The notes: a model not told the origin generated them from the sequence alone. DNA of 64,000 nucleotides from IMGVR_UViG_3300042147_000020:174800-238799; one strand, 5' to 3'; positions 1 through 60,668 are shown, counted from the first letter of the stretch. Translations and numbers: made by a program.

Positions 1-942
1 GTGAACGGTGGTGACCCTTTGATGATGCCTCCGAGTTACTACTGGTCGCTGATTGACATCTTGGACCGTCATAACTGTCCTGCCACGATTGCGTTTACCA
101 CTAACCTGTGGGCGTTCTATAAAAAGCCTGAGCTGTGGGTAGACTTGTTTCGTCATCCGCGTGTGGGCGTTGCTACTTCGTTTCAATACGGTGACAAACG
201 ACTCAAGGGTGACTTGAAACCGTTCACCGAAGCTGAATTCTGGGCCTGCTCTGATCTGATGTTGGAGCTGGTGGGTTATCGACCGACGTTCATTGCGGTC
301 ATTGACAAAGACAATGAAGACTCTGTACTCGACACGGTGTTACTGGCTGCTCGTATGGGAGTAGAGGTCAAGCTGAATCACGCACTGGCTTCAGGTCCAG
401 AGGTGGACTATAAAGGTGTGGTGATGGGGAACCAAAACAAGTTCTTCACTCAAGCTGACATCTACCGACACTACTTGGCCATTTATGACGCTGGGTTAGA
501 GGAACACGAGTACAACACTAAACAGATGACCCGTCGTCTGCGTAATGGTGCAACCACCTGTCCGTTGGCTCGTAACTGCGACCAACACATCCGTGCATTA
601 CAACCGGGTGGTGGTAACTACTTCTCGTGTGGAGCTTTCGGGGATGACAATGAATACCCTATCGACTTTCAGCGTGAGATGTCTGGCGAGTTCTTTACTC
701 CGTTAGAGAGTCAACCTGAACTGTTCAGTATGAAAGACGCCTGTGCTGCGTGTCCGATGTTTGCGATCTGCAACGGGTGCAAGAAGACCATTGCCGACAC
801 CAAACGTTTGGGCCTAACTGAACACCACTGTCGCACAATGAAATCGTTGGCTCCTCGGATCATCGAGGCTAACGGTCTAACGGGTCAGTTAGAACCCACT
901 CCGTATGAAGATGAAACTCCCGTTTTGATTGCCCGAGGTTAA
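1..942 (+). CDS. Radical SAM/SPASM-domain protein, 5'-truncated (N-terminal CxxxCxxC lies outside the window)
   Basis: GGDP (GGE-like) motif at the start, FTTN strand, SPASM-type Cys set CPLARNC...SCGAF...CAACPMFAICNGC...HC. Confidence 0.8.
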   Translation: MNGGDPLMMPPSYYWSLIDILDRHNCPATIAFTTNLWAFYKKPELWVDLFRHPRVGVATSFQYGDKRLKGDLKPFTEAEFWACSDLMLELVGYRPTFIAVIDKDNEDSVLDTVLLAARMGVEVKLNHALASGPEVDYKGVVMGNQNKFFTQADIYRHYLAIYDAGLEEHEYNTKQMTRRLRNGATTCPLARNCDQHIRALQPGGGNYFSCGAFGDDNEYPIDFQREMSGEFFTPLESQPELFSMKDACAACPMFAICNGCKKTIADTKRLGLTEHHCRTMKSLAPRIIEANGLTGQLEPTPYEDETPVLIARG

Positions 943-943
943 A

Positions 944-1915
944 ATGAAGCCTGTTGTCCTCTCCGTGAATCCATGGTACTTCTGTAACTTTCGCTGCTCG
1001 TTCTGTTATCTGACCGAACAACAACTCAGTGACCGTAAACTATTACCGCTAGAACGGTTGGCGGAGATGGTAGACGAAGTACAAGCCGCAGGTTACACCG
1101 TTGAACACATCGACATCTATGGGGGTGAAGTGCTGTTACTGCCCGCTGATTACCTCAACGGGATGAAGCAAGTCTTCCACGACCGAGGGATTGACGATCT
1201 GTGTCTGATCACCAACCTGTCTCTGGTGAATGACGTAGCACTCGATGATGACTACGAGTTGTCGGTGTCGTACGATTTCGAAGCCCGTGAGAAACATGAG
1301 AAAGTCTTTGACAACATGCTTGCCTTACCTCGACAGTTTAACGTGTTGAGTTTGGTGGGTCGTAAGTTCTTGGACGTCGTTACTCCAGACGAATACGTAC
1401 ACACCCTGAACCTGCTCTCCCAGCTCTGGTGTGTGGAACTTAAGCCGTACAGCGAGAACCAAGCCAACGCTGACGCAGTGTCGTTCAAAGAGTTCGAGGA
1501 CTTCGTGTGGGCAGTGATCAAACACCCTGACCGTGAGTTCTATCTGGAGAACGAATCCCTGATTCGCAAAGCGGCTGAAACCAAGACTCGTAATGCGTTC
1601 AGTGACAATCACATCTACATCACCCCTGCGGGTCGTTACGCGGTACTGGAGTTTGATGCCAACGACCGTGAGTTCTTCTTGGAGCTGGATGACTTAGCTG
1701 GTTATCAAGCCTGGTGTGCACTTGAAAAAGAGCGGGTTACCGCCAATGAGTTTTGCAGTAAGTGTCAATTCAAAGGCGGGTGTTTATCCGAACACCTAAG
1801 AGACGTTAGGTCGTTAGAGAACTCCTGTAACGGGTTCCACGACCTGTTAGTGAGGTGGGTAGATGAAGGTAGTCCAACACAGACAGAGACTCGAGATCAC
1901 GCTCGATCTGTTTAA
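944..1915 (+). CDS. Radical SAM protein with C-terminal SPASM-like Cys cluster
   Basis: CNFRCSFC (CxxxCxxC), YGGEV, ITN; C-terminal CSKCQFKGGC...SCNG; ATG at 944 after GAGG. Confidence 0.9.
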   Translation: MKPVVLSVNPWYFCNFRCSFCYLTEQQLSDRKLLPLERLAEMVDEVQAAGYTVEHIDIYGGEVLLLPADYLNGMKQVFHDRGIDDLCLITNLSLVNDVALDDDYELSVSYDFEAREKHEKVFDNMLALPRQFNVLSLVGRKFLDVVTPDEYVHTLNLLSQLWCVELKPYSENQANADAVSFKEFEDFVWAVIKHPDREFYLENESLIRKAAETKTRNAFSDNHIYITPAGRYAVLEFDANDREFFLELDDLAGYQAWCALEKERVTANEFCSKCQFKGGCLSEHLRDVRSLENSCNGFHDLLVRWVDEGSPTQTETRDHARSV

Positions 1916-2879
1916 AGGTTGTGGTCATTCCTGCGGTGGCTGCATGATTGATAAAAGTTTGGGTGGAGACGTGAAAGATCTCCCCGAACTCTTAGCCCTG
2001 ATTCAAGAAATGGTCGGGGTGGGTTACGTAGCGTTTGACCTCGGTGTAGGACCGACGGACTACATGACTGCTGATAACCGTCTCGAAGTGATGCAGAACC
2101 GAACCTTCCAAGAGATGGCTCAACAGTTTCATCAGGTAACATTCAACGCAGCCTTCCTCGACACTAACCTGCTCAACTACGGGGTGATGTGTTACGAGAT
2201 TGATTGTGCAGTACCAGACAAGCCGATTCGCTTTCTGATCCCAGCCGTACCGGCTCATTTCAAGAATGAGAAGTTCGGCTTGATGATTAAAGAAAAGTTG
2301 GAGTACATCAAAAAGAACCTGATCGTAGCTCGACTGAACGAAGCAGGTTTTGTGGTGAACTGTACACAGGAAACTGTGGACGAGAAGTTTGAGGAGCACC
2401 TACGTAATGGGTTTGATATTGAATTCGTGGTGGACAAAGACGACATCCTCACCATCCCTTACGGACGAGCCCCAAACAAAGACTTGCTGGTGGCGCAGAA
2501 TGTTCGTCGAGTGTCTCACCGAATCAGTTCTTTCTATGCGGGGCTGAATGGGGAAGACGAACGTCGACGTAACCCTGATCTCCACTACGACACTGGGACA
2601 ATGGTTAACCTGTTGTACACCGGGGGTAAACTGTACTGGGTTCCTTTCCTCAAAGACGACTGTCCGTTCATAGACGACGACTTTGTGATCCCTCGACCTT
2701 GGACTATGGCTAACCTGTTAGAAGCCCGTAATCGCGCTCGTGATAGCTCCTTGGACTATCTGGAAGGCAGTGAGTGTATGGAGTGTCCTCACCTCGGGAG
2801 CTGTGCCGAGAAAGGCATCACCAGCATCATGCAGAAGTTGTCGATTCGGGATTGCTTAGTGGGGTTGGCCGATGTTTAA
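1863..2879 (+). CDS. Divergent radical SAM-like protein
   Basis: KGCGHSCGGC (CxxxCxxC), GPTD in place of GGE, C-terminal CMECPHLGSC...DC; SD GAGG upstream. Confidence 0.75.
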   Translation: MKVVQHRQRLEITLDLFKGCGHSCGGCMIDKSLGGDVKDLPELLALIQEMVGVGYVAFDLGVGPTDYMTADNRLEVMQNRTFQEMAQQFHQVTFNAAFLDTNLLNYGVMCYEIDCAVPDKPIRFLIPAVPAHFKNEKFGLMIKEKLEYIKKNLIVARLNEAGFVVNCTQETVDEKFEEHLRNGFDIEFVVDKDDILTIPYGRAPNKDLLVAQNVRRVSHRISSFYAGLNGEDERRRNPDLHYDTGTMVNLLYTGGKLYWVPFLKDDCPFIDDDFVIPRPWTMANLLEARNRARDSSLDYLEGSECMECPHLGSCAEKGITSIMQKLSIRDCLVGLADV

Positions 2880-3918
2880 CGAATATGGCGTGATCTCTGT
2901 CAACCTCACGATGGAGATCCTAAAAGGCTGTGGGTTCAGTTGTAGTGACTGTGCCGTACAGAAAGACTTCACTACCTCAGACATTCCTCCAGAGGACTCA
3001 CAGGACCTCCTAGGGCTACTGGATGACCTGCGTGTCAATGAAGTTCGTCTGTTTGAGTTCACTGTAGGTCCAACTGACTTTATCAGTGCCCAGAATGGCT
3101 TCGAGACCTTTAAGCATCCGTTAGTCTTGGGATTAGCTGAACGGTTTGAATCCATGACGTTGTCGTTGGCAATGTTGAGTGACAACCGCTTGGTGGAATT
3201 GGGTGGGGTGATTGACCGTATGATCCCCGAGAAGAAGTTCCGGTTGGTGATCCCTGCCACCCTAAAGAACTTACAGAAACCCAAGTACGTGGAAGCCTTA
3301 CGTCGCCGAGTACACTTGTTGCGCGACAGCCTCCATTCTGCGAAGTTCTACCAGATCTACTTGAACTCCAACATGGTACAGGAGAACCTGAACGAACTGT
3401 CGTACGAGACGGTGTCGAACTCAGGGGCGGCTGACTTAGGGGTTCGTACCACGTTGGAGCACGGCTTCGGTCATGCCCGAGCAGGCTTTCAAAACTTGTT
3501 TAACCGTGATCGGTTCATCTACGACCTGAAGCTCTACGTGGAGCGCAGTAAGGTGCTGAAGGACACCCGGTACCAACGTAAGCTGATTCCGATAACGACC
3601 GATGCGTTAGAGCTGACGTACCGTGCAGGCAAGCTTTATTACACACCGGTGGTGATTGAGAAGTTCCACATCTTTGATCCGGTGTTTGAGATCCCTAAAC
3701 CGTGGACAGCACAAGCGGTACTCGATTTCAAAGAGCAGTTGTACTACCGCATGTTAGAAAAATACGTGGTACACCCATTATGTAGAGATTGTTGCTTTGT
3801 CAACACCTGTGCTTTGGGGGATCATCATGTGGTCATGGATTACCTGAAACACGATGAGTGTTTGACCGACATGAAGAACCGCCACGATATGGATCGAAAG
3901 GATACCCACGGTGAGTGA
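2872..3918 (+). CDS. Divergent radical SAM-like protein, paralog of 1863-2879
   Basis: KGCGFSCSDC, VGPTD, LxYxxGKLY motif shared with the paralog, C-terminal CRDCCFVNTC...EC. Confidence 0.75.
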   Translation: MFNEYGVISVNLTMEILKGCGFSCSDCAVQKDFTTSDIPPEDSQDLLGLLDDLRVNEVRLFEFTVGPTDFISAQNGFETFKHPLVLGLAERFESMTLSLAMLSDNRLVELGGVIDRMIPEKKFRLVIPATLKNLQKPKYVEALRRRVHLLRDSLHSAKFYQIYLNSNMVQENLNELSYETVSNSGAADLGVRTTLEHGFGHARAGFQNLFNRDRFIYDLKLYVERSKVLKDTRYQRKLIPITTDALELTYRAGKLYYTPVVIEKFHIFDPVFEIPKPWTAQAVLDFKEQLYYRMLEKYVVHPLCRDCCFVNTCALGDHHVVMDYLKHDECLTDMKNRHDMDRKDTHGE

Positions 3919-4339
3919 ACATAAAGAGTATCAACGCCTGTACGCCCAACTGGTCACAGATCACCCCGATGACTTTGCCAAGATGGAGATCGTCGAGTCT
4001 GAGGAGCTGGTGGAGAACGCTAAGCACTACTTCCGCGAAGCCACCTTCCCGCTGATCTATCCAGCGAAGTCAATGGCTGTCGCTGTAATCTACGCCCTGT
4101 TACTGGAAGAGACTTACGGGTTACATCCGTTTGACTCCCTTAAAGACCCAGACCTATTCTTAGGTCAAGACCCATACTTCCGTCCGTATGACCAACATCC
4201 CCGTGAATACGATCAATTGATCTGGTGGGTGGCGGAACAACCGAACTGGAAAGAAATGGGCTGGGCACCAAAGACAGTTGAATACTTCTACCTTGAGTGC
4301 ACTGAAGCTGGTATCAGTAAAATCAACGAAGGGGTTTGA
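3911..4339 (+). CDS. Hypothetical accessory protein of the rSAM/oxygenase operon
   Basis: 142 aa ORF overlapping the upstream stop and abutting the next start. Confidence 0.7.
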   Translation: MSEHKEYQRLYAQLVTDHPDDFAKMEIVESEELVENAKHYFREATFPLIYPAKSMAVAVIYALLLEETYGLHPFDSLKDPDLFLGQDPYFRPYDQHPREYDQLIWWVAEQPNWKEMGWAPKTVEYFYLECTEAGISKINEGV

Positions 4340-4340
4340 A

Positions 4341-4898
4341 ATGAAATATGTTGAACCGTGGAGCACTCAATTAGCCCACTTCAATGTCGCAGACTTAGTC
4401 GACTTGGGTGCCTTGCGTGACGAGATCTTCAATCTACACTGTTTGACCGAAGGGGACGACCCAGGACAGAAGTGGATCACCTCTGAGTTCGTACCTGAAA
4501 TTATCCGCATGCGTGATGAACTGATTACCCCACGGGTGATTCAGTACGCCAAAGAGTTGTGGGACTACGACATCCCCAAGATTGAAGTAGAGACCTCGGG
4601 TAAGTGGATTCCTGAAGGTGAAGGACTGTTCCCCCACGTTCATGGTGGTTCGTGTATCAGTACGATCTTTTACCCCTCACCAACTAACTTCGGGTTGAGT
4701 TTTTTCGACCCTCGTTCCAATGCTGGCCGGGGTTATCCGAAAGAGATCCGTGATCGGTTCTTTAAAGCCTTCCCGATTGTTCCTGCGGCGGGGGACATTT
4801 GGATCTTCCCAAGTTACTTACAGCACAGTGTGTCGCACGTCCAAGAGAACGTCCGGTTGAGCATGCTGTGTGAATACTACTTGCGGGAGAACGTTTGA
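4341..4898 (+). CDS. 2OG-Fe(II) oxygenase (PF13759/TIGR02466-like), copy 1
   Basis: PHVHGGS, FDPR, IFPSYLQHSV, RLS motifs. Confidence 0.85.
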   Translation: MKYVEPWSTQLAHFNVADLVDLGALRDEIFNLHCLTEGDDPGQKWITSEFVPEIIRMRDELITPRVIQYAKELWDYDIPKIEVETSGKWIPEGEGLFPHVHGGSCISTIFYPSPTNFGLSFFDPRSNAGRGYPKEIRDRFFKAFPIVPAAGDIWIFPSYLQHSVSHVQENVRLSMLCEYYLRENV

Positions 4899-5464
4899 TG
4901 GAACTGTTCCGTCCTTGGCAAACCAGTATTGCCAGAATCAACGTGGCTGAGTTGTGTGACTTGGATCAGCTTACTCAAGAGATCCTAATTGTCTCTGCCG
5001 GCGGCACTGTAGCCGTCCCACAAGACGCTACACGCGACGATCCGTTCGTAGGTGGCATCGTTACTCTACGTGACGACGTAATCACCCCCAGAGTCATGGA
5101 GTACATTCGCACAGAGTACGGTCTCAACTGTGATCCTGAAACGGTTGCTATGGAAACGTGGGGGATGAACATCGCTCCCGGTAGTGACTTGGAAACACAC
5201 ATCCACGGTTTGTCCAACTTCACGACGGTGTTCTACCCCTGTGAGTCAGACGCTCGCTTAGTACTGGTTGATCCTCGTTTGAATGCAGCACGAGGGTTCT
5301 CTAAGTCTTTGCGTGACCGTAACTTCGGTAACCTACGAGTTGACCCTAAACCCGGAGACTTGTGGATCTTCCCAAGCTTCGTCCCCCATTCTGTGACGTC
5401 AGTAGGTAACGAGTTCCGCCTGTCTTTGGTGAACGATTACTTCCTAGACCCCACCCTCGATTAA
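4898..5464 (+). CDS. 2OG-Fe(II) oxygenase, copy 2
   Basis: THIHGLS, VDPR, IFPSFVPHSV, RLS; TGATG overlap with copy 1. Confidence 0.85.
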   Translation: MELFRPWQTSIARINVAELCDLDQLTQEILIVSAGGTVAVPQDATRDDPFVGGIVTLRDDVITPRVMEYIRTEYGLNCDPETVAMETWGMNIAPGSDLETHIHGLSNFTTVFYPCESDARLVLVDPRLNAARGFSKSLRDRNFGNLRVDPKPGDLWIFPSFVPHSVTSVGNEFRLSLVNDYFLDPTLD

Positions 5465-5475
5465 GAGACCTGAAC

Positions 5476-6030
5476 ATGGAACTGATTCAACCTTGGAACA
5501 CGTCGATCCTTAAAGCGAACGTGTCCCACATGTGTAACGTGGAAGCGATTGCCGATGAGATCCTGTCACTACACAGTCTCTCCCCACAACAGTCCACCAC
5601 GCAGTACAAAATCACCCCAGAAGAGTTCCCAGCTCTGTGTGACTTCCGTGACCGGGTGGTAACTAACCTGGTGAAAGAATTCGTCAAACAAACGATGCGT
5701 TTCGACCTGACACAGTTCACCGTCGATACGTTCGGTAAGTGGTTCGAGAAAGGCATGGATCTTTCTCCGCACACTCACGGTAGCACTGGGATCACCTCTG
5801 TGTTCTACCCGGCTGACTACAAGTCGGGAATGACCGTGTACGATCCGCGTGGTAATGCTTGCCGTGGCTACCCGCGTCAAATCCGGGACGACTACTTCGC
5901 TCCCTTTTACGTCTACCCCAAGGCTGGTGATTTGATCATCATGCCGTCGTTCTTGCAACACTACGTCCCCACCGTAGAAGACGACCTGCGTCTGTCGTTG
6001 ATCAACGATTACATGTTCCCAAGCGTATAA
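5476..6030 (+). CDS. 2OG-Fe(II) oxygenase, copy 3
   Basis: PHTHGST, YDPR, IMPSFLQHYV, RLS. Confidence 0.85.
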   Translation: MELIQPWNTSILKANVSHMCNVEAIADEILSLHSLSPQQSTTQYKITPEEFPALCDFRDRVVTNLVKEFVKQTMRFDLTQFTVDTFGKWFEKGMDLSPHTHGSTGITSVFYPADYKSGMTVYDPRGNACRGYPRQIRDDYFAPFYVYPKAGDLIIMPSFLQHYVPTVEDDLRLSLINDYMFPSV

Positions 6031-6033
6031 ACA

Positions 6034-6066
6034 GAGGAGGGGTTCGTCCCCTCCTTTTATGCCGTC
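6034..6066 (+). terminator. Intrinsic terminator closing the rSAM/oxygenase operon
   Basis: GGAGGGG-ttcgt-CCCCTCC then TTTTATGCCGTC. Confidence 0.8.
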
Positions 6067-6109
6067 ATCTTATGTAAGCTTTTAGCAAATCACGGAAGGG
6101 TGAAGCATT

Positions 6110-6787
6110 ATGTTTGAAGTCGTGGATAAGGGCGCTATTAAAGAGAAACAGCGCAAGTTGAAAGAGCTGGGCCTGTATGAAGGGAATGTGGACGGTATCT
6201 GGGGACCTCTGAGTCAAGCGGCTTGGGATAAGACTCAAGGTGACAAAGTTGTGTCTGCTCCGTTTGATACCACTCGGATCATCTGGGCCACCAAGGTCTC
6301 CAAAGAGTTCATCCTCAAAGTACGGGACATCGCCAAACGTCTTGAGATGCCCACAGAGGGCTCTAACTGGTTGATGGCGTGTATGGCCTTCGAGACCGGT
6401 GAAACCTTCTCACCGACGATCAAGAACGGTGCTGGCGCTCCTTACTACGGACTGATCCAGTTCGGTGAAGCAGCAGCCAAAGATTGTGGCACTACGGTGG
6501 CCGCTCTGGTAAAGATGACTGCTGAGCAACAGCTCGACTACGTATACAAGTTCTTCAAGCCGTACACCGGTAAGCTGAAGACCCTCAGCGACGTTTACTC
6601 TCGCATCATCTGGCCAGTGGCCGTGGGTAAGTCAGAAGACTACGTGATCTTTGACACGAAGGTACGTCCTACTGCGTACGTTCAGAACAAGGGTCTGGAC
6701 ATCAACAAGGACGGCCTCGTCACCAAAGCTGAATGTGCGGCGAAGGTCCAAGAAAAATACGTGCGTGGACTGAAGTTCGTCGCCTAA
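6110..6787 (+). CDS. Modular endolysin: N-terminal peptidoglycan-binding domain plus lysozyme/transglycosylase-like domain
   Basis: QRKLKELGLYEGNVDGIWGPLS (PG_binding_1-like); MACMAFETG catalytic Glu; GLIQF motif. Confidence 0.85.
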   Translation: MFEVVDKGAIKEKQRKLKELGLYEGNVDGIWGPLSQAAWDKTQGDKVVSAPFDTTRIIWATKVSKEFILKVRDIAKRLEMPTEGSNWLMACMAFETGETFSPTIKNGAGAPYYGLIQFGEAAAKDCGTTVAALVKMTAEQQLDYVYKFFKPYTGKLKTLSDVYSRIIWPVAVGKSEDYVIFDTKVRPTAYVQNKGLDINKDGLVTKAECAAKVQEKYVRGLKFVA

Positions 6788-6799
6788 TGGAATCTATAC

Positions 6800-8365
6800 A
6801 TGAGTAAGCTAGCCGCCTACCTCCCCTCGATGGAGGAAGAACAATACGAACCAGAAATCCGTGACGATCACACTGAGTTCTCTCAGTTCGACGTGACTAC
6901 CACTGGTGCTGAAGTTGACCAAGCACTCGCCGACCACAGTACCACTGGTGAGATCATCGCCACGTTGGAAAGTATCCTCGACGACATCGAAGCTACTGAC
7001 AGTCTGACTCCGCAGTCGCGTGTGTTTATCGGCCATTCGATTCAGTCGGTACAACACCGCATCGGCTTGGTTGTTCGCACGCCTTCGATGGAAGCGAATG
7101 ATGAAGACGGTCGCCAGATCTCCATGGAAGGGATCGCCCAAGGGTTGGCTAAACTCTGGGAAGGCACTGTTGAACTGATCCGTAAGATCCTTCGCAGCAT
7201 CCGTGACTTCTTCGCCACGATCCTCGGCTTCGGTAAACGTAAAGAGAAGCGCATCAAGTATCAACTGGAGAAGGCCAAGGAAGGTGGCAACGATGCGTCG
7301 ATCTCCAAGCTGGCTGAGAAGAACCTGCTCAAGCACTTGAAAGACGTGTCTTCGGTACAGAAGGTTCTCGACAATCTGGTAGCTACGCCACTGGGGAAGG
7401 AACGTCCAGAGCAACTGGTTCTACTGTCTCCAGCGTCAGCCCAGATCGTGGTGCGTGAAAGCGATGGTCAGGTGGACAGTTCTCGTCCAATGACGGTCAA
7501 CGGTCAAGACATCGTGGCCATGCGTAAGAAAGACGTGCAGGCCGTGAGTCATATGTCCTTGGGTCAGGTCAAACACGCTCTGATTACTGCCATGGTGGTT
7601 AACGGTGGTCGTACGTTCCTTACTAAGGAGAAGGACTTCGTCTTGATGTCTCACGAAGACGTCAACGAGATGGTGTGGGACACTGCGTTCCGGGGTAAGG
7701 AAGCCCGTCAGAAAGGTAAGGAGCTGTCAGCACTGCTGATGAAGATTGCTAATAAAGCTGAGAAAGCTTTTACTAGCGTCGATGCTTTTAACCGACACAA
7801 TGTCAACATCTCAGACGAGTTGTTAAACGCCACTCGCATTGAGCGCGCCGCTGTCTTCAAGCTCTTCCGTGAGTTCGTTGGTAAGGGCGACATGGTACCG
7901 TTGGGTTCAGCAATGTTGCGCGTAGTGGATCATCATCCTGAACACTTGCAGATTGCCAAGTTCGATCACATTCCTGTGGTCAGCGAGAACATCGGTAAAG
8001 TCGTGAAGATCAAGTTCCCACAATACGGGGAAGTGAAGAAAGCGGCTGACGGTATCGTGACGGTTACACTGTTGAGTAACTTCAACGGTTCAATCGACGC
8101 TGCACTCAAAGGCTTCGAGGACGTACTGAAAGTCTACGAGCGGTTACAAGCGTGGGCGATTAGTAATGCGAAGGGTGATAACATCATCCAACGTCAGGTC
8201 AGTAGCTGCATCCGTGAAATGTACGACGAGCCAGTGAAGTACTTCAGTTCGTACATCCGTGCGGTTGGCGTAATGGAAACAGTCGTGATTGGTTGGGGTG
8301 ATTCTATCACTCACCCGTTGAGCAAGCTGACAGATTCCAAGAACCTGATGGCTGAACTCGCCTAA
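6800..8365 (+). CDS. Virion inner-head protein (phiKZ-type paralog family)
   Basis: Acidic propeptide with SME sites (LPSMEE, TPSMEA, QISMEG) followed by amphipathic helix LWEGTVELIRKILRSIRDFF. Confidence 0.7.
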   Translation: MSKLAAYLPSMEEEQYEPEIRDDHTEFSQFDVTTTGAEVDQALADHSTTGEIIATLESILDDIEATDSLTPQSRVFIGHSIQSVQHRIGLVVRTPSMEANDEDGRQISMEGIAQGLAKLWEGTVELIRKILRSIRDFFATILGFGKRKEKRIKYQLEKAKEGGNDASISKLAEKNLLKHLKDVSSVQKVLDNLVATPLGKERPEQLVLLSPASAQIVVRESDGQVDSSRPMTVNGQDIVAMRKKDVQAVSHMSLGQVKHALITAMVVNGGRTFLTKEKDFVLMSHEDVNEMVWDTAFRGKEARQKGKELSALLMKIANKAEKAFTSVDAFNRHNVNISDELLNATRIERAAVFKLFREFVGKGDMVPLGSAMLRVVDHHPEHLQIAKFDHIPVVSENIGKVVKIKFPQYGEVKKAADGIVTVTLLSNFNGSIDAALKGFEDVLKVYERLQAWAISNAKGDNIIQRQVSSCIREMYDEPVKYFSSYIRAVGVMETVVIGWGDSITHPLSKLTDSKNLMAELA

Positions 8366-8370
8366 CACGC

Positions 8371-8408
8371 GGCATAGAGGGAGGGCTCACGCCCTCCCTC
8401 GTTATGCC
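8371..8408. terminator. Bidirectional terminator between convergent genes
   Basis: GGCATA-GAGGGAGGGC-tcac-GCCCTCCCTC-gt-TATGCC. Confidence 0.75.
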
Positions 8409-8818
8409 CCTTGTGCTCCAAGTAACAACTTCACCAGCTCCATGCCGGTACTGAAGATAGTGTTCAGGGTTTCTACGTCCATCCCACCTTCTTCACTAGA
8501 GTACATAAAGGTGGACATCGCTCCAATCACCACCATGGCCAACGCAATGATCACCGCACCGGCTTTCATAATGTTCACCCCACGGGATGAGCTTGAACCG
8601 AAGCCCTCCAGGTTACCGATGTCCATGGTCAGAATAGCGACTTGGGTTTTATCCTCCATCACTACAATCTTTTCCATAACTTGGTCACCAGTATCGGCCA
8701 AAGTAACCAGCTTGTCGTCTGGCAGATGGAAGTTGCAGATCTTCACGATCATTCCTCCCCATGACTTAGTGCCGATTGCCTCTGAACCGAGAACCCCTAG
8801 CGCGCCTCCGATGTTCAT
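8402..8818 (-). CDS. Hypothetical membrane protein
   Basis: SD GAGGGGAG; hydrophobic segment AGAVIIALAMVVIGAM. Confidence 0.65.
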   Translation of the reverse strand: MNIGGALGVLGSEAIGTKSWGGMIVKICNFHLPDDKLVTLADTGDQVMEKIVVMEDKTQVAILTMDIGNLEGFGSSSSRGVNIMKAGAVIIALAMVVIGAMSTFMYSSEEGGMDVETLNTIFSTGMELVKLLLGAQGA

Positions 8819-8849
8819 ATTGCTCCCCTCGCTCGCAATGCGTGCTATA

Positions 8850-9092
8850 TCAGCTATCCATCTGGTACCTCGAGGTAATCTGGACTCTGGTCTGAGTCTT
8901 CAACCCCTTTGCCTCTATTTCCAACTGCTGGTTGGTTCCTTCCAAGCTCTCTGCCTTTTGAGCAGCTTCGGCTAAAGCTTTAGCAGTGTCATCGTAGTAC
9001 CAATACAGTCCATAGAACAGACCGGTAACTAGAAGTAGTCGGAGACTATGTTTACCAGTCCCCCTGAAAATTAACACCATCCGTGATTTCAT
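8850..9092 (-). CDS. Small membrane-anchored coiled-coil protein
   Basis: N-terminal TM LLLVTGLFYGLYWYY then heptad-like AKALAEAAQKAESLEGTNQQLE; start overlaps the RuvC stop. Confidence 0.6.
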   Translation of the reverse strand: MKSRMVLIFRGTGKHSLRLLLVTGLFYGLYWYYDDTAKALAEAAQKAESLEGTNQQLEIEAKGLKTQTRVQITSRYQMDS

Positions 9093-9679
9093 ATCCCCGC
9101 ACCCTTAACGAAATTGATTAACGCTAAGCATTTGAAGTAACCTACGGCGATGCTGTCAGTGGAGTGCTCGTCGAGATCCTCAATGCGCTTACCAGACATG
9201 TTCCGAAAGTTAGGCAACTTCAGAATAGCCCACTTGACATCATCTTTGTTCTTGCTCTTACCAGACACGCCCACTGCCATCTTTGCCGAAGGAGGATCAA
9301 CTGTCTCCAAAGGCATGCAGAGATCGTATTCGTAGAGCGCGCGACGGATGGCAGTCTTGCATTCAACCAGTGCTTCGAAGGCCTGCGGAAATCGCCCCAA
9401 GAAGGGCGACTCACAGATCAAAGAATGAATACCAAAGTAGCGCATCCAGTTCAACAGCTCCACGCCGTGAGAATGGAGTTTAGCCCATCGACCACCGTGT
9501 ACTTCTTCTACGCCGGGATACCGACGCATGTTACGGCTCCCGTGTAGGGTGTTGACGTCCCGAAGGATAATCTCCCCAGTAAAGAGATCCACGTCGAGGA
9601 TACAAGTCCCCAAGGTGTCTGTACCAGGGTCGATAGCGCCTACACGAAAGTAACGACTGTGTTCAGGGATAAACAACAT
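9089..9679 (-). CDS. ruvC: RuvC-like Holliday junction resolvase
   Basis: GAIDPGT, LICESP, DSIAVG catalytic acidic motifs. Confidence 0.85.
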   Translation of the reverse strand: MLFIPEHSRYFRVGAIDPGTDTLGTCILDVDLFTGEIILRDVNTLHGSRNMRRYPGVEEVHGGRWAKLHSHGVELLNWMRYFGIHSLICESPFLGRFPQAFEALVECKTAIRRALYEYDLCMPLETVDPPSAKMAVGVSGKSKNKDDVKWAILKLPNFRNMSGKRIEDLDEHSTDSIAVGYFKCLALINFVKGAGI

Positions 9680-9685
9680 AAGCGA

Positions 9686-10552
9686 TTAACCGTTGTTAGC
9701 ACTCACGTAGTCGGCGTCAGACAGCAACGGCTCGGTAGCACCCAGTTCGATGTCCTGAGTGAAGCCTTTGTTAGTGAAGGCTACGGAGTGGTGAGTAGTG
9801 ATGAAGGAGTTCACCTGACAGGCGATAACTTCTTTCATGTTGAACTGCGTGTTACCTGGACCTTGAACAGTCAGGGTACGGTCAACACCGGAACACAGAC
9901 CGATCTCGGAGATCACGGCGTAGGCTTCGTTGTCGAACAGAATGCGGCAAGCGTCGATCAGCTCTTTCACGTCTTCGGCACTGAAGATCAGTGTCAAGAT
10001 ACTCGAGGTCGACAGGTAGTCGCCAGACGAACTGATCACACCGGTGTTCGACATCACTGGTGGAGTCGGGTTCAGGTTAGCCAGGTTCGGTACGTACGGT
10101 TCGGTAACTTTCTGGTCACCGTCGACGATCGTGTGGTTGATGGCCGGAGCAGTGTTCGCCAAGCTGATGCGCTTGAGGTAGTACGCCCAGTAGTTGGTAC
10201 CAGCGATGTTCAACAGTACCCGCAGTGCGTAACGACTACGTTCGATGACGGTCAGGTCATTGTCGACGCGGCGCAGTACAAAAGGCAGGTGACGGTACAG
10301 AGCAGCATCGGAAGCTCGGTGTGGCAAAGGAGATGTGTAAGGAACACCATCGGCGCCCACCATGTTCTTGTGACCGCCGTTACCGATACAGTAGTACTGC
10401 ATTGCGGGGCGTTCGAGTTCACTGAGTTCTTCATCAACAAAGACGTTGAACTTCTCGTTGAGAGTGGTGTGGTCCAGAATCGTTGGGCGTTGACCCAGAA
10501 GCAATGAGGTCTGAAGGGATGAGCCCCAGACACTACGGGTAATTGTTTTCAT
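9686..10552 (-). CDS. Virion structural protein (phiKZ-like conserved)
   Basis: Likely start MKTITRS at 10552; lies in the structural block. Confidence 0.6.
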   Translation of the reverse strand: MKTITRSVWGSSLQTSLLLGQRPTILDHTTLNEKFNVFVDEELSELERPAMQYYCIGNGGHKNMVGADGVPYTSPLPHRASDAALYRHLPFVLRRVDNDLTVIERSRYALRVLLNIAGTNYWAYYLKRISLANTAPAINHTIVDGDQKVTEPYVPNLANLNPTPPVMSNTGVISSSGDYLSTSSILTLIFSAEDVKELIDACRILFDNEAYAVISEIGLCSGVDRTLTVQGPGNTQFNMKEVIACQVNSFITTHHSVAFTNKGFTQDIELGATEPLLSDADYVSANNG

Positions 10553-56407: not shown

Positions 56408-57727
56408 TTACACGATAACGTGCGGGATGAAGCGTTCGTTCTTCCACGACAGAGTCGGGGATTCGAATTCACGGATACACAAGGTAGCCGCTGTGGAGTC
56501 CATCATGTCGTCACGGTCTTCGACAGCGTCGGGAACCATGAACATACCGATGATGAAGTTGTGACGACCTTCGACCTGACCCGGAGGACAGTACGCTTGG
56601 TAAACACAGTCATCGGTGTACGGACCTTCCGACTCGTGCACTAATTCGTTGTGATCACCGAAGATCTTGACGTTAGACGACATGCGACCAACTAGAGGCT
56701 TCTGGACGTACGAAAGACCGGACTTGATGAACGGTTCAGGTGACATGTAGGTAGCTAGGGTAGGAACGTCATCCCACGCGCAACCATAACCCGCTGGGTC
56801 AGATTCACGCAGGTAGGTGATGTAAGCCCAGATACCTTTGTTCGAAGCAAACCAACGCCACGCAGGCTCCAGGAAGGTTACGTTACCTGCCCAGTTAGCC
56901 CACTCTTTGTAACCTTGAGGGAAGTTCTCAACCATCTCTTCCCACGGAGACAAAGCAAAGACCACGTCCAGACGACGCTCACCGATGACCCACGGCTTAT
57001 CACGACAAGCGTGATCGTAGTCGATGTCTTCGAAGGTTGCGAACAGGGTGGTGTTGTTCTGACCCAAGATCTGAGCCAGCGTTTCAGCAGTCACCATGTC
57101 TTCAAAGCTGCGCTGTTCGAACAGTACACCGACAAAGCCTGGGACTTGACCCAGCTCTTCGAGTTCGTGGATCAGCGTAGGCCAGAACATGTTGAGTTGG
57201 TCTTCCTCGTCACCAGTGAACTGTTTGCACAGGTTGGTTTGAAGGTTGACCGATTCGAACAACATGGTCGGGGTATCGCCGTTGAACTCGTAGATCCCGG
57301 TCACCTTTTCAGTGACTGGATCAAACGCAGCATCGAAGCGACCGTACAACGACTGGCGAGCAGAACCGTGGTTACGGAATGTCCACTTGGCGTAGTCAAT
57401 GAAGTACGGGTGTTTACGCAGGAAGTCACAGCCCATGAAATCCATGATGGTCGCATGGTTCTCGTTGAACAGACGACCTACTGCGTCAACCAGTTGGGCG
57501 TAGGCGCGTTCGAACATCAGTTCCATCGGAGCACACGAGGCTTGACGGATGGTGTAGAACGGCATCGCATCTTGGTTCTTGATGAAGTAATCGAAGTAAT
57601 CGGTTACATCCGCTTTGAACTTGGCGTCTGCAATCGCGCCTTCACGATAAAAGCCTTGCGACCAAGGTAGCTCTTCAACCATGATTTGGTTAAGGTCGAA
57701 GCGGATCTTCTTTTTCAAACATTGCAT
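56408..57727 (-). CDS. Glutathionylspermidine-synthase-like ATP-grasp ligase (YgiC/YjfC family)
   Basis: YGRFD, YEFNGDTPTMLFES, LEPAW..FASNKG, YVQKPLVGRMSSNV, ERFIPH. Confidence 0.88.
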   Translation of the reverse strand: MQCLKKKIRFDLNQIMVEELPWSQGFYREGAIADAKFKADVTDYFDYFIKNQDAMPFYTIRQASCAPMELMFERAYAQLVDAVGRLFNENHATIMDFMGCDFLRKHPYFIDYAKWTFRNHGSARQSLYGRFDAAFDPVTEKVTGIYEFNGDTPTMLFESVNLQTNLCKQFTGDEEDQLNMFWPTLIHELEELGQVPGFVGVLFEQRSFEDMVTAETLAQILGQNNTTLFATFEDIDYDHACRDKPWVIGERRLDVVFALSPWEEMVENFPQGYKEWANWAGNVTFLEPAWRWFASNKGIWAYITYLRESDPAGYGCAWDDVPTLATYMSPEPFIKSGLSYVQKPLVGRMSSNVKIFGDHNELVHESEGPYTDDCVYQAYCPPGQVEGRHNFIIGMFMVPDAVEDRDDMMDSTAATLCIREFESPTLSWKNERFIPHVIV

Positions 57728-58399: not shown

Positions 58400-58678
58400 T
58401 TATGCGATTGGGGTACACGAGTCGATGGTGAAGAGGACCTTTTGGGGATCACCCTCAGCAAACTCACGAAGCTTCCCTATCACCACCGTGAGATCCAACT
58501 GACCTTGTGGTGTAGGGAACCAGCTCAACAACTGATCAACCTGACGTTGCGTTTCCTCAGGGTGATAGTCGATGTAGTGTTCCGGGGCCAGGTCCACCTT
58601 TGGCAATGGCTTACCGAAATCAAACACCGTCCCTGACGGAATATCGAACAACGCCCCGACGTTAAACGGCACCTTCAT
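58400..58678 (-). CDS. Hypothetical protein
   Basis: 92 aa; overlaps the thyA stop. Confidence 0.55.
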   Translation of the reverse strand: MKVPFNVGALFDIPSGTVFDFGKPLPKVDLAPEHYIDYHPEETQRQVDQLLSWFPTPQGQLDLTVVIGKLREFAEGDPQKVLFTIDSCTPIA

Positions 58679-60240: not shown

Positions 60241-60251
60241 TATTCCTCTCC

Positions 60252-60668
60252 TTAGAGGTAGATGTAAGCGCATTCGTTGTTGAGAATGTGGTCGAGCATC
60301 GACCGGCGATGTATGGCGATCTCGTCCTCGTTGTTATAGATGAAGCAGTCTTGCAGGATTTCAAGGAACGCTTCAATCCGACCCGGTTGTTCAGTTGGGT
60401 GATTAAAGAAGCTGACATGTACGGACGACTCGTGATCGGGTGGAATGTCCATGTCACGGTGATGCGGTGGGATCACATTGGAGATCACAATGATAGTCCC
60501 AGTGTTCTTTGCACGAGCAAAGCAGCAGAGCAGATGTTGAGGTGCCCCGGTTTCAGGATCAGTCAACTTCACGAAGTCACCCAAAGGAGCAACTTGACGG
60601 AATCCTTCAACGTTCAAAAACAACTGACGAACCCGGTTTGGAATCAACGTAGCTTCAGCTTTCAACAT
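60252..60668 (-). CDS. Hypothetical protein
   Basis: Likely start MLKAEA after the promoter-like motif. Confidence 0.5.
   Translation of the reverse strand: MLKAEATLIPNRVRQLFLNVEGFRQVAPLGDFVKLTDPETGAPQHLLCCFARAKNTGTIIVISNVIPPHHRDMDIPPDHESSVHVSFFNHPTEQPGRIEAFLEILQDCFIYNNEDEIAIHRRSMLDHILNNECAYIYL

What the first reader, a model, noticed from the sequence alone, without database searches (positions are those of the whole stretch)
1..6066. Phage operon of four radical-SAM/SPASM proteins plus three 2OG-Fe(II) oxygenases: candidate undescribed modification pathway
Seen: eight genes on one strand, overlapping or 1-11 nt apart, closed by one terminator. Three have intact CxxxCxxC, all four rSAM-like proteins have C-terminal SPASM-type Cys sets, and three oxygenases follow. 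Established: rSAM-SPASM enzymes are mainly peptide/protein maturases (RiPPs, mycofactocin, anaerobic sulfatase maturation), and 2OG oxygenases often tailor the same products. Inference: a multi-step, phage-encoded post-translational (RiPP-like or virion-protein) or small-molecule modification pathway, unusual in a jumbo phage. No precursor peptide is visible here, so the substrate gene may lie left of position 1. DNA base hypermodification is a weaker alternative.
Basis: partly seen in the sequence, partly recalled or inferred. Interest (0 to 1): 0.92.

Follow-up and report, generated by a model that had tools for sequence, protein, structure and literature searches.

The report
Radical-SAM cassette maturing a virion protein
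The eight genes are the right half of an 11-kb, 14-gene cassette found beside tail-fibre genes in many large phages; its radical-SAM enzymes and iron oxygenases probably modify the invariant Cys-His-x-Ser tail of a small virion protein encoded just left of the window, which nobody has yet explained.

Summary
There are eight co-oriented, overlapping or tightly spaced genes closed by a hairpin at 6035-6055. Four are radical-SAM-like with invariant cluster cysteines. One is a 142-aa orphan. Three are PF13759 2OG oxygenases.

The operon is truncated by the window edge. On the phage's own 238.8-kb contig it continues 5.1 kb leftwards: JmjC-type cupin, SPASM radical-SAM, x1, x2, rB, SPASM radical-SAM, then window gene 1.

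It is a confidently folded domain ending in (Cys-His-x-Ser)x3-Arg-x-Arg-Arg-stop. That tail is invariant across homologues of 24-50% identity (766 clusters at 50% identity). x1 is present in every related locus fetched through window gene 2.

The gene order recurs in phiKZ-like, Atu_ph07-like and T4-like aquatic phages and in Bdellovibrionota MAG contigs, always beside fibre or baseplate genes.

In published Atu_ph07 virion proteomics the x1 homologue is a virion protein that runs in the top gel band. The enzymes are absent from the virion.

Best reading: enzymatic maturation of a virion protein tail. The chemistry is unknown; His-to-Ser cyclophanes, thioethers, epimerisation and hydroxylation are candidates. 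Published genome papers note the genes without assigning a function.

The parts
1..942 (+). g1: radical-SAM/SPASM enzyme, 5' end cut by the window. The full gene is L004:8884-9999 (371 aa).
   Evidence: PF04055 scores 47.5 bits. C19/23/26 and eight C-terminal Cys are invariant in 20/20 orthologues. Identity across phage lineages is 50-72%. The best PDB hit is anSME 4k36, E 5.7e-5.
944..1915 (+). g2: radical-SAM enzyme with one auxiliary-cluster motif (CxxCx5C...C).
   Evidence: PF04055 scores 40.3 bits. C14/18/21 and C271/274/280/295 are invariant in 17/17 orthologues. The best profile-against-PDB match is the YydG peptide epimerase, E 7e-10, over the N-terminal 133 positions only.
1863..2879 (+). 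g3: divergent radical-SAM-like protein, paralogue of g4.
   Evidence: No Pfam, NCBIfam or PDB hit. C20/24/27 and C305/308/314/331 are invariant in 8/8 orthologues. g3 and g4 are 24% identical, E 3e-27.
2872..3918 (+). g4: divergent radical-SAM-like protein, paralogue of g3.
   Evidence: C20/24/27 and C304/307/313/330 are invariant in 9/9 orthologues. No library hit.
3911..4339 (+). g5: conserved 142-aa helical protein of unknown function, a core member of the cassette.
   Evidence: phrog_20737, E 1e-37. 73 homologues, all unnamed. AF2 pLDDT 93.8. No fold match in PDB and no sequence match. It hits the same 15 phage records as g2 and x2.
4341..4898 (+). g6: PF13759 2OG-Fe(II) oxygenase paralogue.
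   Evidence: 37.7 bits against the cut-off of 27. H99-x-H101...H162 and R172-x-S174 are invariant in 16/16 sequences.
4898..5464 (+). g7: PF13759 2OG-Fe(II) oxygenase paralogue.
   Evidence: 35.7 bits. 36-39% identical to g6 and g8.
5476..6030 (+). g8: PF13759 2OG-Fe(II) oxygenase paralogue.
   Evidence: 31.8 bits. Its nearest solved relatives are the uncharacterised structural-genomics proteins 3bvc and 2rg4.
6035..6055 (+). Terminator-like hairpin that closes the operon.
   Evidence: AGGAGGGG-ttcgt-CCCCTCCT followed by TTTTA.

Best explanation
Window 1-6066 is the distal half of a roughly 11.2-kb late-type operon. On the phage's own contig it reads: tail-fibre genes u1 and u2, then JmjC-type cupin, rA (SPASM radical-SAM), x1, x2, rB, rC (SPASM radical-SAM), g1, g2, g3, g4, g5 and three PF13759 oxygenases.

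I propose that x1 is the substrate. It is a 183-aa folded virion protein whose exposed C-terminus is (Cys-His-x-Ser)x3-Arg-x-Arg-Arg. The radical-SAM enzymes would act iteratively on each Cys-His-x-Ser unit. They lack an N-terminal RRE domain, as does anSME, which acts on proteins. The chemistries most consistent with their nearest relatives are:
- His-C2-to-Ser-C-beta three-residue cyclophanes (rA resembles YhhB/FxsB);
- Cys thioether formation or Cys oxidation (SPASM enzymes rC and g1);
- epimerisation (g2 resembles YydG).

The cupin and the 2OG oxygenases would then hydroxylate or oxidise the product. The matured x1 would be built into the baseplate or fibre region of the virion, possibly covalently cross-linked.

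What is shown: gene content, motif invariance, co-occurrence and synteny, and virion location of one homologue. What is inferred: that x1 is the substrate, which residues are modified, every chemical step, and the role in infection.
For: Upstream half. It was recovered on L004 and L003, which are the same sequence as the window. rA passes the SPASM model TIGR04085 (30 bits against 27), and its best curated hits are peptide or protein maturases: YhhB 6e-13, FxsB, anSME and PapB.

x1 tail. It is invariant in 80/80 word-index homologues. Alignments A1 and A2 show C168 H169 C172 H173 C176 H177 R180 R182 R183 as invariant, against a mean column identity of 37-39%. Of the best 146 representatives clustered at 50% identity, 140 end in tandem CHxx units, 134 of them with exactly three, followed by R-x-R-R. 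Position 4 of the unit is Ser in 83% and Asn in 14%. The family has 766 clusters.

Co-occurrence. All loci fetched through g2 that have enough upstream DNA carry exactly one such ORF. Gene order is conserved in 12 phage loci and 9 MAG loci. g2, g5 and x2 hit the same 15 phage records.

Structure. AF2 gives x1 a folded domain (pLDDT 89.5) with a low-confidence terminal tail (pLDDT 57-58).

Repeat number. It varies from 3 to 4 to about 9 units while the enzyme set stays the same, as expected for enzymes that act iteratively on a repeated core.

Virion location. In the Atu_ph07 virion proteome the x1 homologue gp170 (31.9 kDa) was found with 8 peptides and 35% coverage. It was most abundant in band 1, above the 117-137-kDa proteins. 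None of the radical-SAM proteins, x2 or the cupin were listed (PMC6102473 Table S5).

Genomic setting. The cassette always sits next to fibre or baseplate genes. Goslar has the u2 homologue without the cassette.

Precedents. HxsB and HxsC mature a protein with HxS repeats (PMC13128918). YhhB, HaaB and HtkB make His-x-x cyclophanes (PMC11499958).
Against: No modified residue has been observed. The Atu_ph07 gel used loading buffer with no reducing agent listed, so the high-mass band could be plain disulfides formed by the three Cys.

Three Cys plus three His could simply be a metal or Fe-S site that needs no enzymes.

Six radical-SAM enzymes plus four oxygenases is a large number for a 16-residue tail, so some may have other substrates.

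Locus L013 has x1, x2, rC and a B12-radical-SAM but no cupin, rA, g1 or g2 within 10 kb.

Scores against every curated maturase family are far below their cut-offs.

g3 and g4 have no detectable relative outside this cassette. x2, rB and g5 have no assignable role. Radical-SAM enzymes are oxygen-sensitive and 2OG oxygenases need oxygen, so how they work together is unexplained.
Confidence: 0.55

Rival explanations
1. x1 is a long-leader RiPP precursor. Its C-terminal 16-mer is modified, cut off and released as a small product such as a metallophore, toxin or signal. It would not be kept on a virion protein.
For: The conserved core lies at the extreme C-terminus next to a SPASM maturase, as in mycofactocin, PQQ and NHLP-type precursors (established knowledge). 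Cys/His-rich cores suggest metal binding. Repeat number is variable.
Against: The cassette in 20+ loci contains no protease, exporter or immunity gene. The N-terminal 165 residues are a conserved, confidently folded domain. The Atu_ph07 homologue was found in virions at 35% coverage. The setting is always the fibre or baseplate module.
Confidence: 0.1
2. The CH-repeat tail of x1 is an unmodified metal or Fe-S binding site of a structural protein. The radical-SAM and oxygenase enzymes make or modify something else, such as another virion protein (fibres), a glycan or lipid, or a small molecule.
For: Cys3His3 with i/i+4 spacing could ligate metals, and trimeric fibres often carry His-ligated metal ions (established knowledge). 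The number of enzymes exceeds what a 16-residue tail seems to need. RP12 has a non-homologous radical-SAM cassette at the same place without any CH-repeat protein.
Against: x1 directly follows the most canonical peptide-maturase-like enzyme in nearly all loci. It co-occurs with the enzymes in all g2-seeded loci. The only other candidate motif, the NPHxxTK fibre repeats, is confined to the phiKZ-like subgroup. The best hits of rA, g1 and g2 are all peptide- or protein-modifying enzymes.
Confidence: 0.2
3. The pathway hypermodifies phage DNA bases or makes modified nucleotides, either viperin-like or MoaA-like chemistry on NTPs or post-replicative thymidine modification.
For: g2's top NCBIfam hits include prokaryotic viperin (1.8e-10) and MoaA. 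The RSF1 group has two DHFR genes inside the cassette. Radical-SAM enzymes take part in thymidine hypermodification (PMC5889632, PMC8989533).
Against: The viperin and MoaA matches cover only the generic N-terminal 100 residues and score 31-40 bits against cut-offs of 180-284. The DHFR pair sits beside an HNH homing endonuclease and is absent from all other lineages, so it looks like an insertion. The cassette contains no kinase, glycosylase-fold transferase, hydroxymethylase or DNA-binding gene. The thymidylate-synthase homologue of the window is 52 kb away. The cassette is embedded in structural genes.
Confidence: 0.05
4. The cassette is a counter-defence or host-takeover module. Matured x1, or a product of the enzymes, neutralises an envelope or periplasmic barrier such as the HXS system.
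For: HXS is a radical-SAM-matured HxS-repeat protein that blocks phage DNA entry in the periplasm (PMC13128918). x1 carries HxS units plus a basic tail and is delivered with the virion.
Against: There is no homology to HxsA, HxsB, HxsC or HxsD above noise. HXS is almost confined to Pseudomonadota (PMC13128918), whereas the cassette also occurs in aquatic T4-like phages and in a Gemella MAG contig. This reading is also compatible with the best explanation, because it concerns the role rather than the mechanism.
Confidence: 0.1

Closest known systems
HXS antiphage system (HxsA with five His-x-Ser repeats, matured by radical-SAM enzymes HxsB and HxsC plus HxsD; PMC13128918)
   Same: Several radical-SAM enzymes mature a full-size protein, not a short peptide. 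The critical element is a tandem His-x-Ser array rich in basic residues. An accessory small protein of unknown fold is part of the system.
   Different: There is no sequence membership: HxsB and HxsC models score 13-24 bits against cut-offs of 268-370, and x1, x2 and g5 have no HxsA or HxsD hit. This cassette is phage-encoded, each unit starts with an invariant Cys, it has 4-6 radical-SAM enzymes plus Fe oxygenases, and the substrate is a virion protein.
Triceptide (three-residue cyclophane) synthases YhhB, FxsB, HaaB and HtkB (PMC11499958)
   Same: These are SPASM radical-SAM enzymes that cross-link an aromatic residue, including His-C2, to C-beta of residue +2 in repeated omega-x-x motifs. 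rA's best curated hit is YhhB, and the x1 repeat contains H-x-S.
   Different: rA scores 48 bits against the cut-off of 445. The substrate is a 183-aa folded protein with no leader or RRE logic. The invariant Cys in each unit has no counterpart in triceptides. The cross-link is untested.
Anaerobic sulfatase-maturating enzyme (anSME) and QhpD, which matures the QHNDH gamma subunit
   Same: These are SPASM enzymes without an RRE domain that modify Cys or Ser in proteins. anSME makes formylglycine and QhpD makes Cys-Asp/Glu thioethers. anSME is the best solved relative of g1 and a full-length hit of rA.
   Different: Scores are about a tenth of the family cut-offs. The sulfatase motif C/S-x-P/A-x-R is only loosely echoed by the last unit, C-H-x-S-R. 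No sulfatase or dehydrogenase is present.
PQQ and mycofactocin pathways
   Same: A SPASM radical-SAM enzyme acts on residues at or near the extreme C-terminus of a gene product encoded next to it, and oxygen-dependent tailoring enzymes follow.
   Different: Those pathways have short precursors, an RRE protein (PqqD, MftB) and a peptidase, and they release a cofactor. None of these features is detectable here.
YydG radical-SAM peptide epimerase (PDB 8ai1)
   Same: It is the best solved relative of the g2 family (E 7e-10). Both have one auxiliary cluster in addition to the radical-SAM cluster.
   Different: The match covers only the first 133 positions, and the C-terminal halves are unrelated by sequence.
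PF13759 / TIGR02466 '2OG-Fe(II) oxygenases' (phrog_81) of phages
   Same: g6, g7 and g8 are members by Pfam score. They share the invariant H...H and RxS residues.
   Different: The family itself has no known substrate; its solved members 3bvc and 2rg4 are uncharacterised. Here the first metal motif is H-x-H rather than the classical H-x-D/E.

Membership tests
Radical SAM superfamily (PF04055) | CxxxCxxC motif that binds the SAM-cleaving 4Fe-4S cluster | tested here: met
   Present in g1 (on L004), g2, g3, g4, rA and rC. It is invariant in all 8-20 orthologues of each.
Radical SAM superfamily (PF04055) | Pfam score above the gathering threshold of 29.5 bits | tested here: inconclusive
   g1 scores 47.5 and g2 40.3, so both are met. 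rA (26.3) and rC (19.3) fall below the threshold. g3 and g4 give no hit at E<=1.
SPASM domain (TIGR04085 / PF13186) | Seven-Cys motif Cx9-15Gx4C ... CxxCx5Cx2-3C ... C for two auxiliary clusters | tested here: met
   g1, rA and rC each have 7-8 invariant C-terminal Cys in that pattern. rA passes TIGR04085 (30 bits against 27).
   Only four Cys are invariant (CxxCx5C...C), which is one auxiliary cluster. These are partial-SPASM or twitch-like proteins.
RiPP biosynthetic cluster | Precursor gene with a conserved core, adjacent to its maturase | tested here: met
   x1 directly follows rA and has an invariant C-terminal core. Co-occurrence holds in all adequate loci.
RiPP biosynthetic cluster | Short leader peptide, RRE domain or protein, and leader peptidase or exporter | tested here: not met
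   x1 is a 183-aa folded protein. The radical-SAM motifs start at residues 14-29, which leaves no room for an N-terminal RRE. No protease or transporter was found in any locus. x2 and g5 have no RRE-like hit.
Triceptide synthases (NF041707 YhhB, TIGR04269 FxsB) | Score above the curated cut-off | tested here: not met
   rA scores 48.4 against 445 and 43.1 against 370.
Triceptide synthases (NF041707 YhhB, TIGR04269 FxsB) | Repeated aromatic-x-x motifs in the substrate | tested here: met
   There are three H-x-S units, with position 4 of each CHxx unit being Ser in 83%.
Triceptide synthases (NF041707 YhhB, TIGR04269 FxsB) | C-C cross-link between the ring and C-beta of residue +2 | not testable with these tools
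   This needs MS and NMR of matured x1.
HXS defence system | HxsA, HxsB, HxsC and HxsD homologues | tested here: not met
   TIGR03977 and TIGR03978 score 13-24 bits against cut-offs of 268-370. No family hits x1, x2, g5 or rB.
Anaerobic sulfatase maturase (TIGR03942) | Score above 349 bits and the substrate motif C/S-x-P/A-x-R | tested here: not met
   rA scores 43 bits and g1 34.8 bits. The x1 units are C-H-x-S, and only the last unit is followed by Arg.
2OG-Fe(II) oxygenase PF13759 | Pfam gathering score; metal-binding His residues; RxS 2OG-binding motif | tested here: met
   Scores are 37.7, 35.7 and 31.8 bits against 27. H99, H101, H162, R172 and S174 are invariant or nearly so in 16 sequences. 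The first motif is HxH, not HxD.
JmjC / cupin oxygenase (PF08007, PF07883) | Pfam score and the HxD...H triad | tested here: met
   PF08007 scores 36.3 bits against 22. H106, D108 and H146 are invariant in 9/9 sequences. This gene lies left of the window.
Phage DNA hypermodification pathway | Base hydroxymethylase, kinase, transferase or DNA glycosylase-fold genes clustered with the radical-SAM genes | tested here: not met
   None was found in the cassette in any lineage. The DHFR pair occurs only in the RSF1 group, beside an HNH gene.

The most novel reading that the evidence does not exclude
Tailed phages of several unrelated lineages, and possibly predatory Bdellovibrionota, use a dedicated battery of radical-SAM and Fe(II) oxygenase enzymes to install RiPP-type cross-links in the (Cys-His-x-Ser)n tail of a baseplate- or fibre-associated virion protein. 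The candidate cross-links are His-Ser cyclophanes, thioethers and D-residues. This would be the first enzymatically 'RiPP-matured' structural protein of a virus. It could be a covalent or metal-binding device used in host recognition or envelope penetration, mirroring the bacterial HXS effector.
Probability: 0.4. Interest if true: 0.9.

Novelty: new variant of a known kind. Interest (0 to 1): 0.8.

Why it matters
Radical-SAM/SPASM maturases are known for short secreted peptides and a few cellular proteins. They are not known for virus particles.

Clusters of 6-12 radical-SAM genes in jumbo, T4-like and Campylobacter phages have been called 'highly unusual' since 2010 without explanation (PMC2853527, PMC12390700). 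They also lie in the host-recognition cluster of abundant marine myophages (PMC7029224).

A concrete substrate makes the question directly testable in culturable phages (DT01, RSF1/RSL2, FLC6, S13, Atu_ph07, Phosso). That substrate is a virion protein with an invariant 16-residue tail, in a family of more than 750 clusters.

The finding would also give the large orphan phage PF13759 oxygenase family a first context. It could reveal new peptide chemistry on a Cys-His-x-Ser motif.

Tried and rejected
- A near-identity DNA search of 1-6100 against 50,697 phage records found no match. The phage itself is known only from metagenomes (JGI 3300042147, Logan SRR35147550).
- The 59-aa ORF PA10_00061 of DT01 was considered as a precursor. 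I rejected it because it has no Cys or His motif, overlaps the g1 orthologue and has no counterpart in L004.
- The NPHxxTK repeats of tail-fibre u2 were considered as a second substrate. I rejected this because they occur only in the phiKZ-like subgroup.
- Fold and sequence searches gave nothing usable for several proteins. Foldseek against PDB found nothing for x1 or g5, and against BFVD x1 matched only its own family. Profile searches against PDB found nothing usable for x1, x2, g5 or g3/g4.
- A T4-like-group x1 homologue (P0027) searched against isolate phages gave no match.
- HXS membership was tested and rejected.
- I looked for an exact insertion site by homology of g9 to the Goslar endolysin-like gene. 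tblastn found no match, so I claim only that Goslar has the fibre gene without the cassette.
- Whether the Bdellovibrionota contigs are chromosomal or phage could not be settled.
- Sigma-70 promoter scans were not informative: 3 sites were found against 5.7 expected.

Full report
**Observation**

The + strand of window 1-6066 carries eight ORFs: g1 1-942, g2 944-1915, g3 1863-2879, g4 2872-3918, g5 3911-4339, g6 4341-4898, g7 4898-5464 and g8 5476-6030. They overlap or lie 1-11 nt apart. An 8-bp GC-rich hairpin followed by TTTTA sits at 6035-6055. Pfam calls g2 Radical_SAM (40.3 bits) and g6-g8 2OG-FeII_Oxy_5 (31.8-37.7 bits against a cut-off of 27). g3, g4 and g5 hit nothing. The window belongs to a phiKZ-like jumbo phage: it has PhiKZ_MCP at E 3.5e-213, phiKZ_IP at 6800-8365, and its own replication and nucleotide-metabolism genes.

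**The operon is cut by the window edge**

An exact-protein look-up of g2 found the window's own contig. It is JGI 3300042147 Ga0450910_000001, 238,799 bp, held as locus L004, where window position 1 equals L004 position 9058. A Logan copy of the same sequence was also found. On the same strand, upstream of g1, lie:
- u1, more than 744 aa, with PHROG matches to virion structural and tail-fibre families;
- u2, 541 aa, a tail-fibre protein with five ~61-aa NPHxxTK repeats;
- a JmjC_2/cupin protein (L004:3944-4453);
- rA (4454-5491);
- x1 (5496-6047);
- x2 (6068-6796);
- rB (6780-7844), which has no radical-SAM motif;
- rC (7859-8851);
- the full g1 (8884-9999).

The cassette therefore has 14 genes over about 11.2 kb. 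Six of them carry CxxxCxxC (rA, rC, g1-g4) and four are Fe oxygenases.

**Cysteine motifs**

In alignments of 8-20 orthologues per gene (19-87% identity), the CxxxCxxC cysteines are invariant in all six families. rA, rC and g1 keep 7-8 further invariant cysteines in the SPASM pattern. g2, g3 and g4 keep only CxxCx5C...C. All other cysteines vary. rA passes the SPASM model TIGR04085. The 2OG paralogues keep H-x-H...H and R-x-S. The cupin keeps H-x-D...H.

**The predicted substrate exists**

x1 ends ...CHTSCHGACHGSRGRR-stop. The Atu_ph07, Phosso, DT01 and RSF1 counterparts end in the same pattern even though their bodies are otherwise barely alignable. All 80 homologues from the word-index search carry the tail. 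In alignments A1 and A2 the only invariant positions apart from three Gly/Pro are C168 H169 C172 H173 C176 H177 R180 R182 R183.

An index-free HMM search of 1.84 billion cluster representatives found 766 family members. Of the best 146, 140 end in tandem C-H-x-x units, 134 of them with exactly three, and these are followed by R-x-R-R. Position 4 of the unit is Ser in 83% and Asn in 14%, so each unit contains His-x-Ser. Repeat number rises to 4 (L020) and to about 9 (L026).

AlphaFold2 gives a confident alpha/beta domain (pLDDT 89.5, pTM 0.83) with a low-confidence terminal tail. The fold matches nothing in PDB, and in BFVD it matches only its own family. No CHxxCH peptide is encoded anywhere in the window.

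**Co-conservation**

g2, g5 and x2 each hit the same 15 phage records: DT01, the RSF1/RSL2/FLC/S13 group, Atu_ph07 and Phosso. Loci seeded with g2 from IMG/VR (L008-L012) and loci seeded with x1 (L013-L018) share one gene order: cupin, rA, x1, x2, (rB), rC..., g1, g2, (g3, g4), g5, then oxygenases. This order holds across phiKZ-like, Atu_ph07-like (470-490 kb) and ~170-kb T4-like aquatic phage contigs. The T4-like contigs add a B12-binding radical-SAM gene.

A scan of one genome per species found the same cassette on contigs of five Bdellovibrionota MAGs, a Rhodobacteraceae MAG (with two tandem x1 genes), a Gemella MAG and a Dysosmobacter assembly.

The neighbours are always fibre or baseplate genes. 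Examples are a 4,449-aa virion protein and baseplate wedge in Atu_ph07, DUF4815 and baseplate wedge or T4 gp15-like genes in the T4-like contigs, and Peptidase_S74 fibres in L015 and L021. Goslar has the u2 homologue followed directly by an endolysin-like gene with no cassette. RP12 has an unrelated four-radical-SAM cassette at that place.

**Experimental hint from the literature**

Atu_ph07 virion ESI-MS/MS (PMC6102473, Table S5) lists gp170, the x1 homologue. Its predicted mass is 31.89 kDa, and it was found with 8 peptides and 35% coverage in bands 1-9, most abundantly in band 1. In the same gel, 117-137-kDa proteins peak in band 2 and 28-kDa proteins in band 7. gp176, gp177 and gp181 are listed. 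The radical-SAM proteins gp164, gp165, gp168 and gp171, x2 (gp169) and the cupin (gp172) are not listed. So x1 is a virion protein and the enzymes are not. x1 also migrates as an SDS- and heat-stable high-mass species. The described loading buffer lists no reductant, so disulfides are an alternative to enzymatic cross-links.

**What the enzymes resemble**

- rA's best curated hits are YhhB (6e-13), FxsB, anSME, PapB and DynA, several of them matching over the full length.
- g1's best hits are anSME (PDB 4k36) and peptide maturases.
- The g2 family profile hits the YydG peptide epimerase at 7e-10 and viperin and MoaA only at ~1e-3, over the generic N-terminal core.
- The g3/g4 family hits nothing.

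All scores are about a tenth of the family cut-offs, so none of these proteins is a member of a curated family. In all six proteins the radical-SAM motif begins at residues 14-29, so there is no N-terminal RRE domain. anSME, which acts on proteins, has the same layout.

YhhB, HaaB and HtkB cross-link His-C2 to C-beta of residue +2 (PMC11499958). HxsB and HxsC mature the HxS-repeat protein HxsA, giving +8 Da on the sequence SHRSS (PMC13128918). These are the closest functional analogues, but x1, x2, g5 and rB show no Hxs homology. g5 (AF2 pLDDT 93.8, helical) and x2 have no detectable relatives of known function.

**Mechanism proposed**

The cassette is expressed with the fibre genes. The radical-SAM enzymes act iteratively on each Cys-His-x-Ser unit of the x1 tail. 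Candidate reactions are His-to-Ser cyclophane formation, Cys thioether formation or oxidation, and epimerisation. The cupin and PF13759 oxygenases would add oxygen-dependent tailoring. The matured x1 is then incorporated into the baseplate or fibre region.

Shown: the anatomy, the invariance, the co-occurrence, and the virion location of one homologue. Inferred: that x1 is the substrate, every chemical step, and the biological role.

Rivals, with my estimate for each:
- a released RiPP (0.1);
- an unmodified metal site, with the enzymes serving another substrate (0.2);
- DNA or nucleotide modification (0.05);
- a counter-defence role, which is compatible with the main model (0.1).

**Novelty**

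Genome papers have counted these genes without assigning a function. Examples are six radical-SAM genes in DT01 (PMC8541153); eight in Aeromonas phage 332-Vera, called 'highly unusual' (PMC12390700), although that phage was not among the tblastn hits and its genes were not compared here; cassettes in the host-recognition cluster of pelagimyophages (PMC7029224); and cupin, radical-SAM and 2OG genes in S13 and FLC6 (PMC11898562, PMC8066314). I found no paper that describes the CH-repeat protein or links it to the enzymes. I rate it a new variant of a known kind: a radical-SAM maturase system with a repeat-bearing substrate, here acting on a virion protein.

Noticed in passing
L030:15071-21026 (Ralstonia phage RP12) and L031 (Goslar): RP12 carries a different, non-homologous cassette of four CxxxCxxC proteins at the equivalent place, right after u2-type fibre genes. 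It has no CH-repeat protein. A small ORF074 there ends ...SHTHYSPDGSY. Goslar has the fibre gene followed directly by an endolysin-like gene. Radical-SAM cassettes beside fibre genes may be a wider theme.
   Followed up: partly
L021:4487-8226; L019, L020, L024, L025; L023: The cassette occurs on contigs of five Bdellovibrionota MAGs. In L021 it is preceded by three Peptidase_S74 fibre proteins with a weak N-terminal prepilin-methylation motif. In L023 an x1-like tail lies next to prepilin-peptidase-like and pilin-like ORFs. Whether these contigs are chromosomal or phage is unresolved.
   Followed up: partly
L026 (Dysosmobacter segnis BX15, 4.3-kb contig): This is the closest relative of the window phage found (rC 86% and g1 71% identical). 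Its x1 tail is expanded to about nine CHxS units. It is probably phage DNA in a bacterial assembly.
   Followed up: no
L002:5044-6333 (RSF1): An HNH endonuclease gene plus two dihydrofolate reductase genes interrupt the cassette in the RSF1 group only. This looks like a mobile insertion rather than part of the pathway.
   Followed up: partly
L013, L017, L018: The T4-like aquatic versions add a 533-576-aa B12-binding radical-SAM protein. L013 lacks the cupin, rA, g1 and g2 within 10 kb of x1.
   Followed up: no
L022:9965-10555 (Gemella MAG, 208-kb contig): This is a variant x1 with tail CHSSCHSNCHHR-stop and no RxRR. It is surrounded by five radical-SAM-like genes and coiled-coil proteins, in the only Gram-positive-associated locus found.
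   Followed up: partly
window 58675-60270 (-): A thymidylate-synthase homologue of 531 aa, about twice the usual size. Its Pfam match is split and it has a ~110-aa N-terminal extension. It could be a modified-pyrimidine enzyme.
   Followed up: no
window 56408-57724 (-) and 62757-63923 (-): A glutathionylspermidine-synthase-like protein (PF03738, E 8.7e-39) and a nicotinate phosphoribosyltransferase-family protein (PF04095, E 3e-24). Both are auxiliary metabolic genes of the jumbo phage.
   Followed up: no
window 6110-6787 (+): g9 directly after the operon matches baseplate-hub and peptidase PHROGs and has a weak PG_binding_1 domain. It is annotated as a transglycosylase in DT01. The phiKZ internal-head protein gene follows at 6800-8365.
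   Followed up: partly
L004:2258-3883 (left of the window): Tail-fibre protein u2 has five ~61-aa repeats built around NPHxxTKxQVGLG. Homologues occur in 132 phage records, among them Goslar, PCH45 and RP12.
   Followed up: yes
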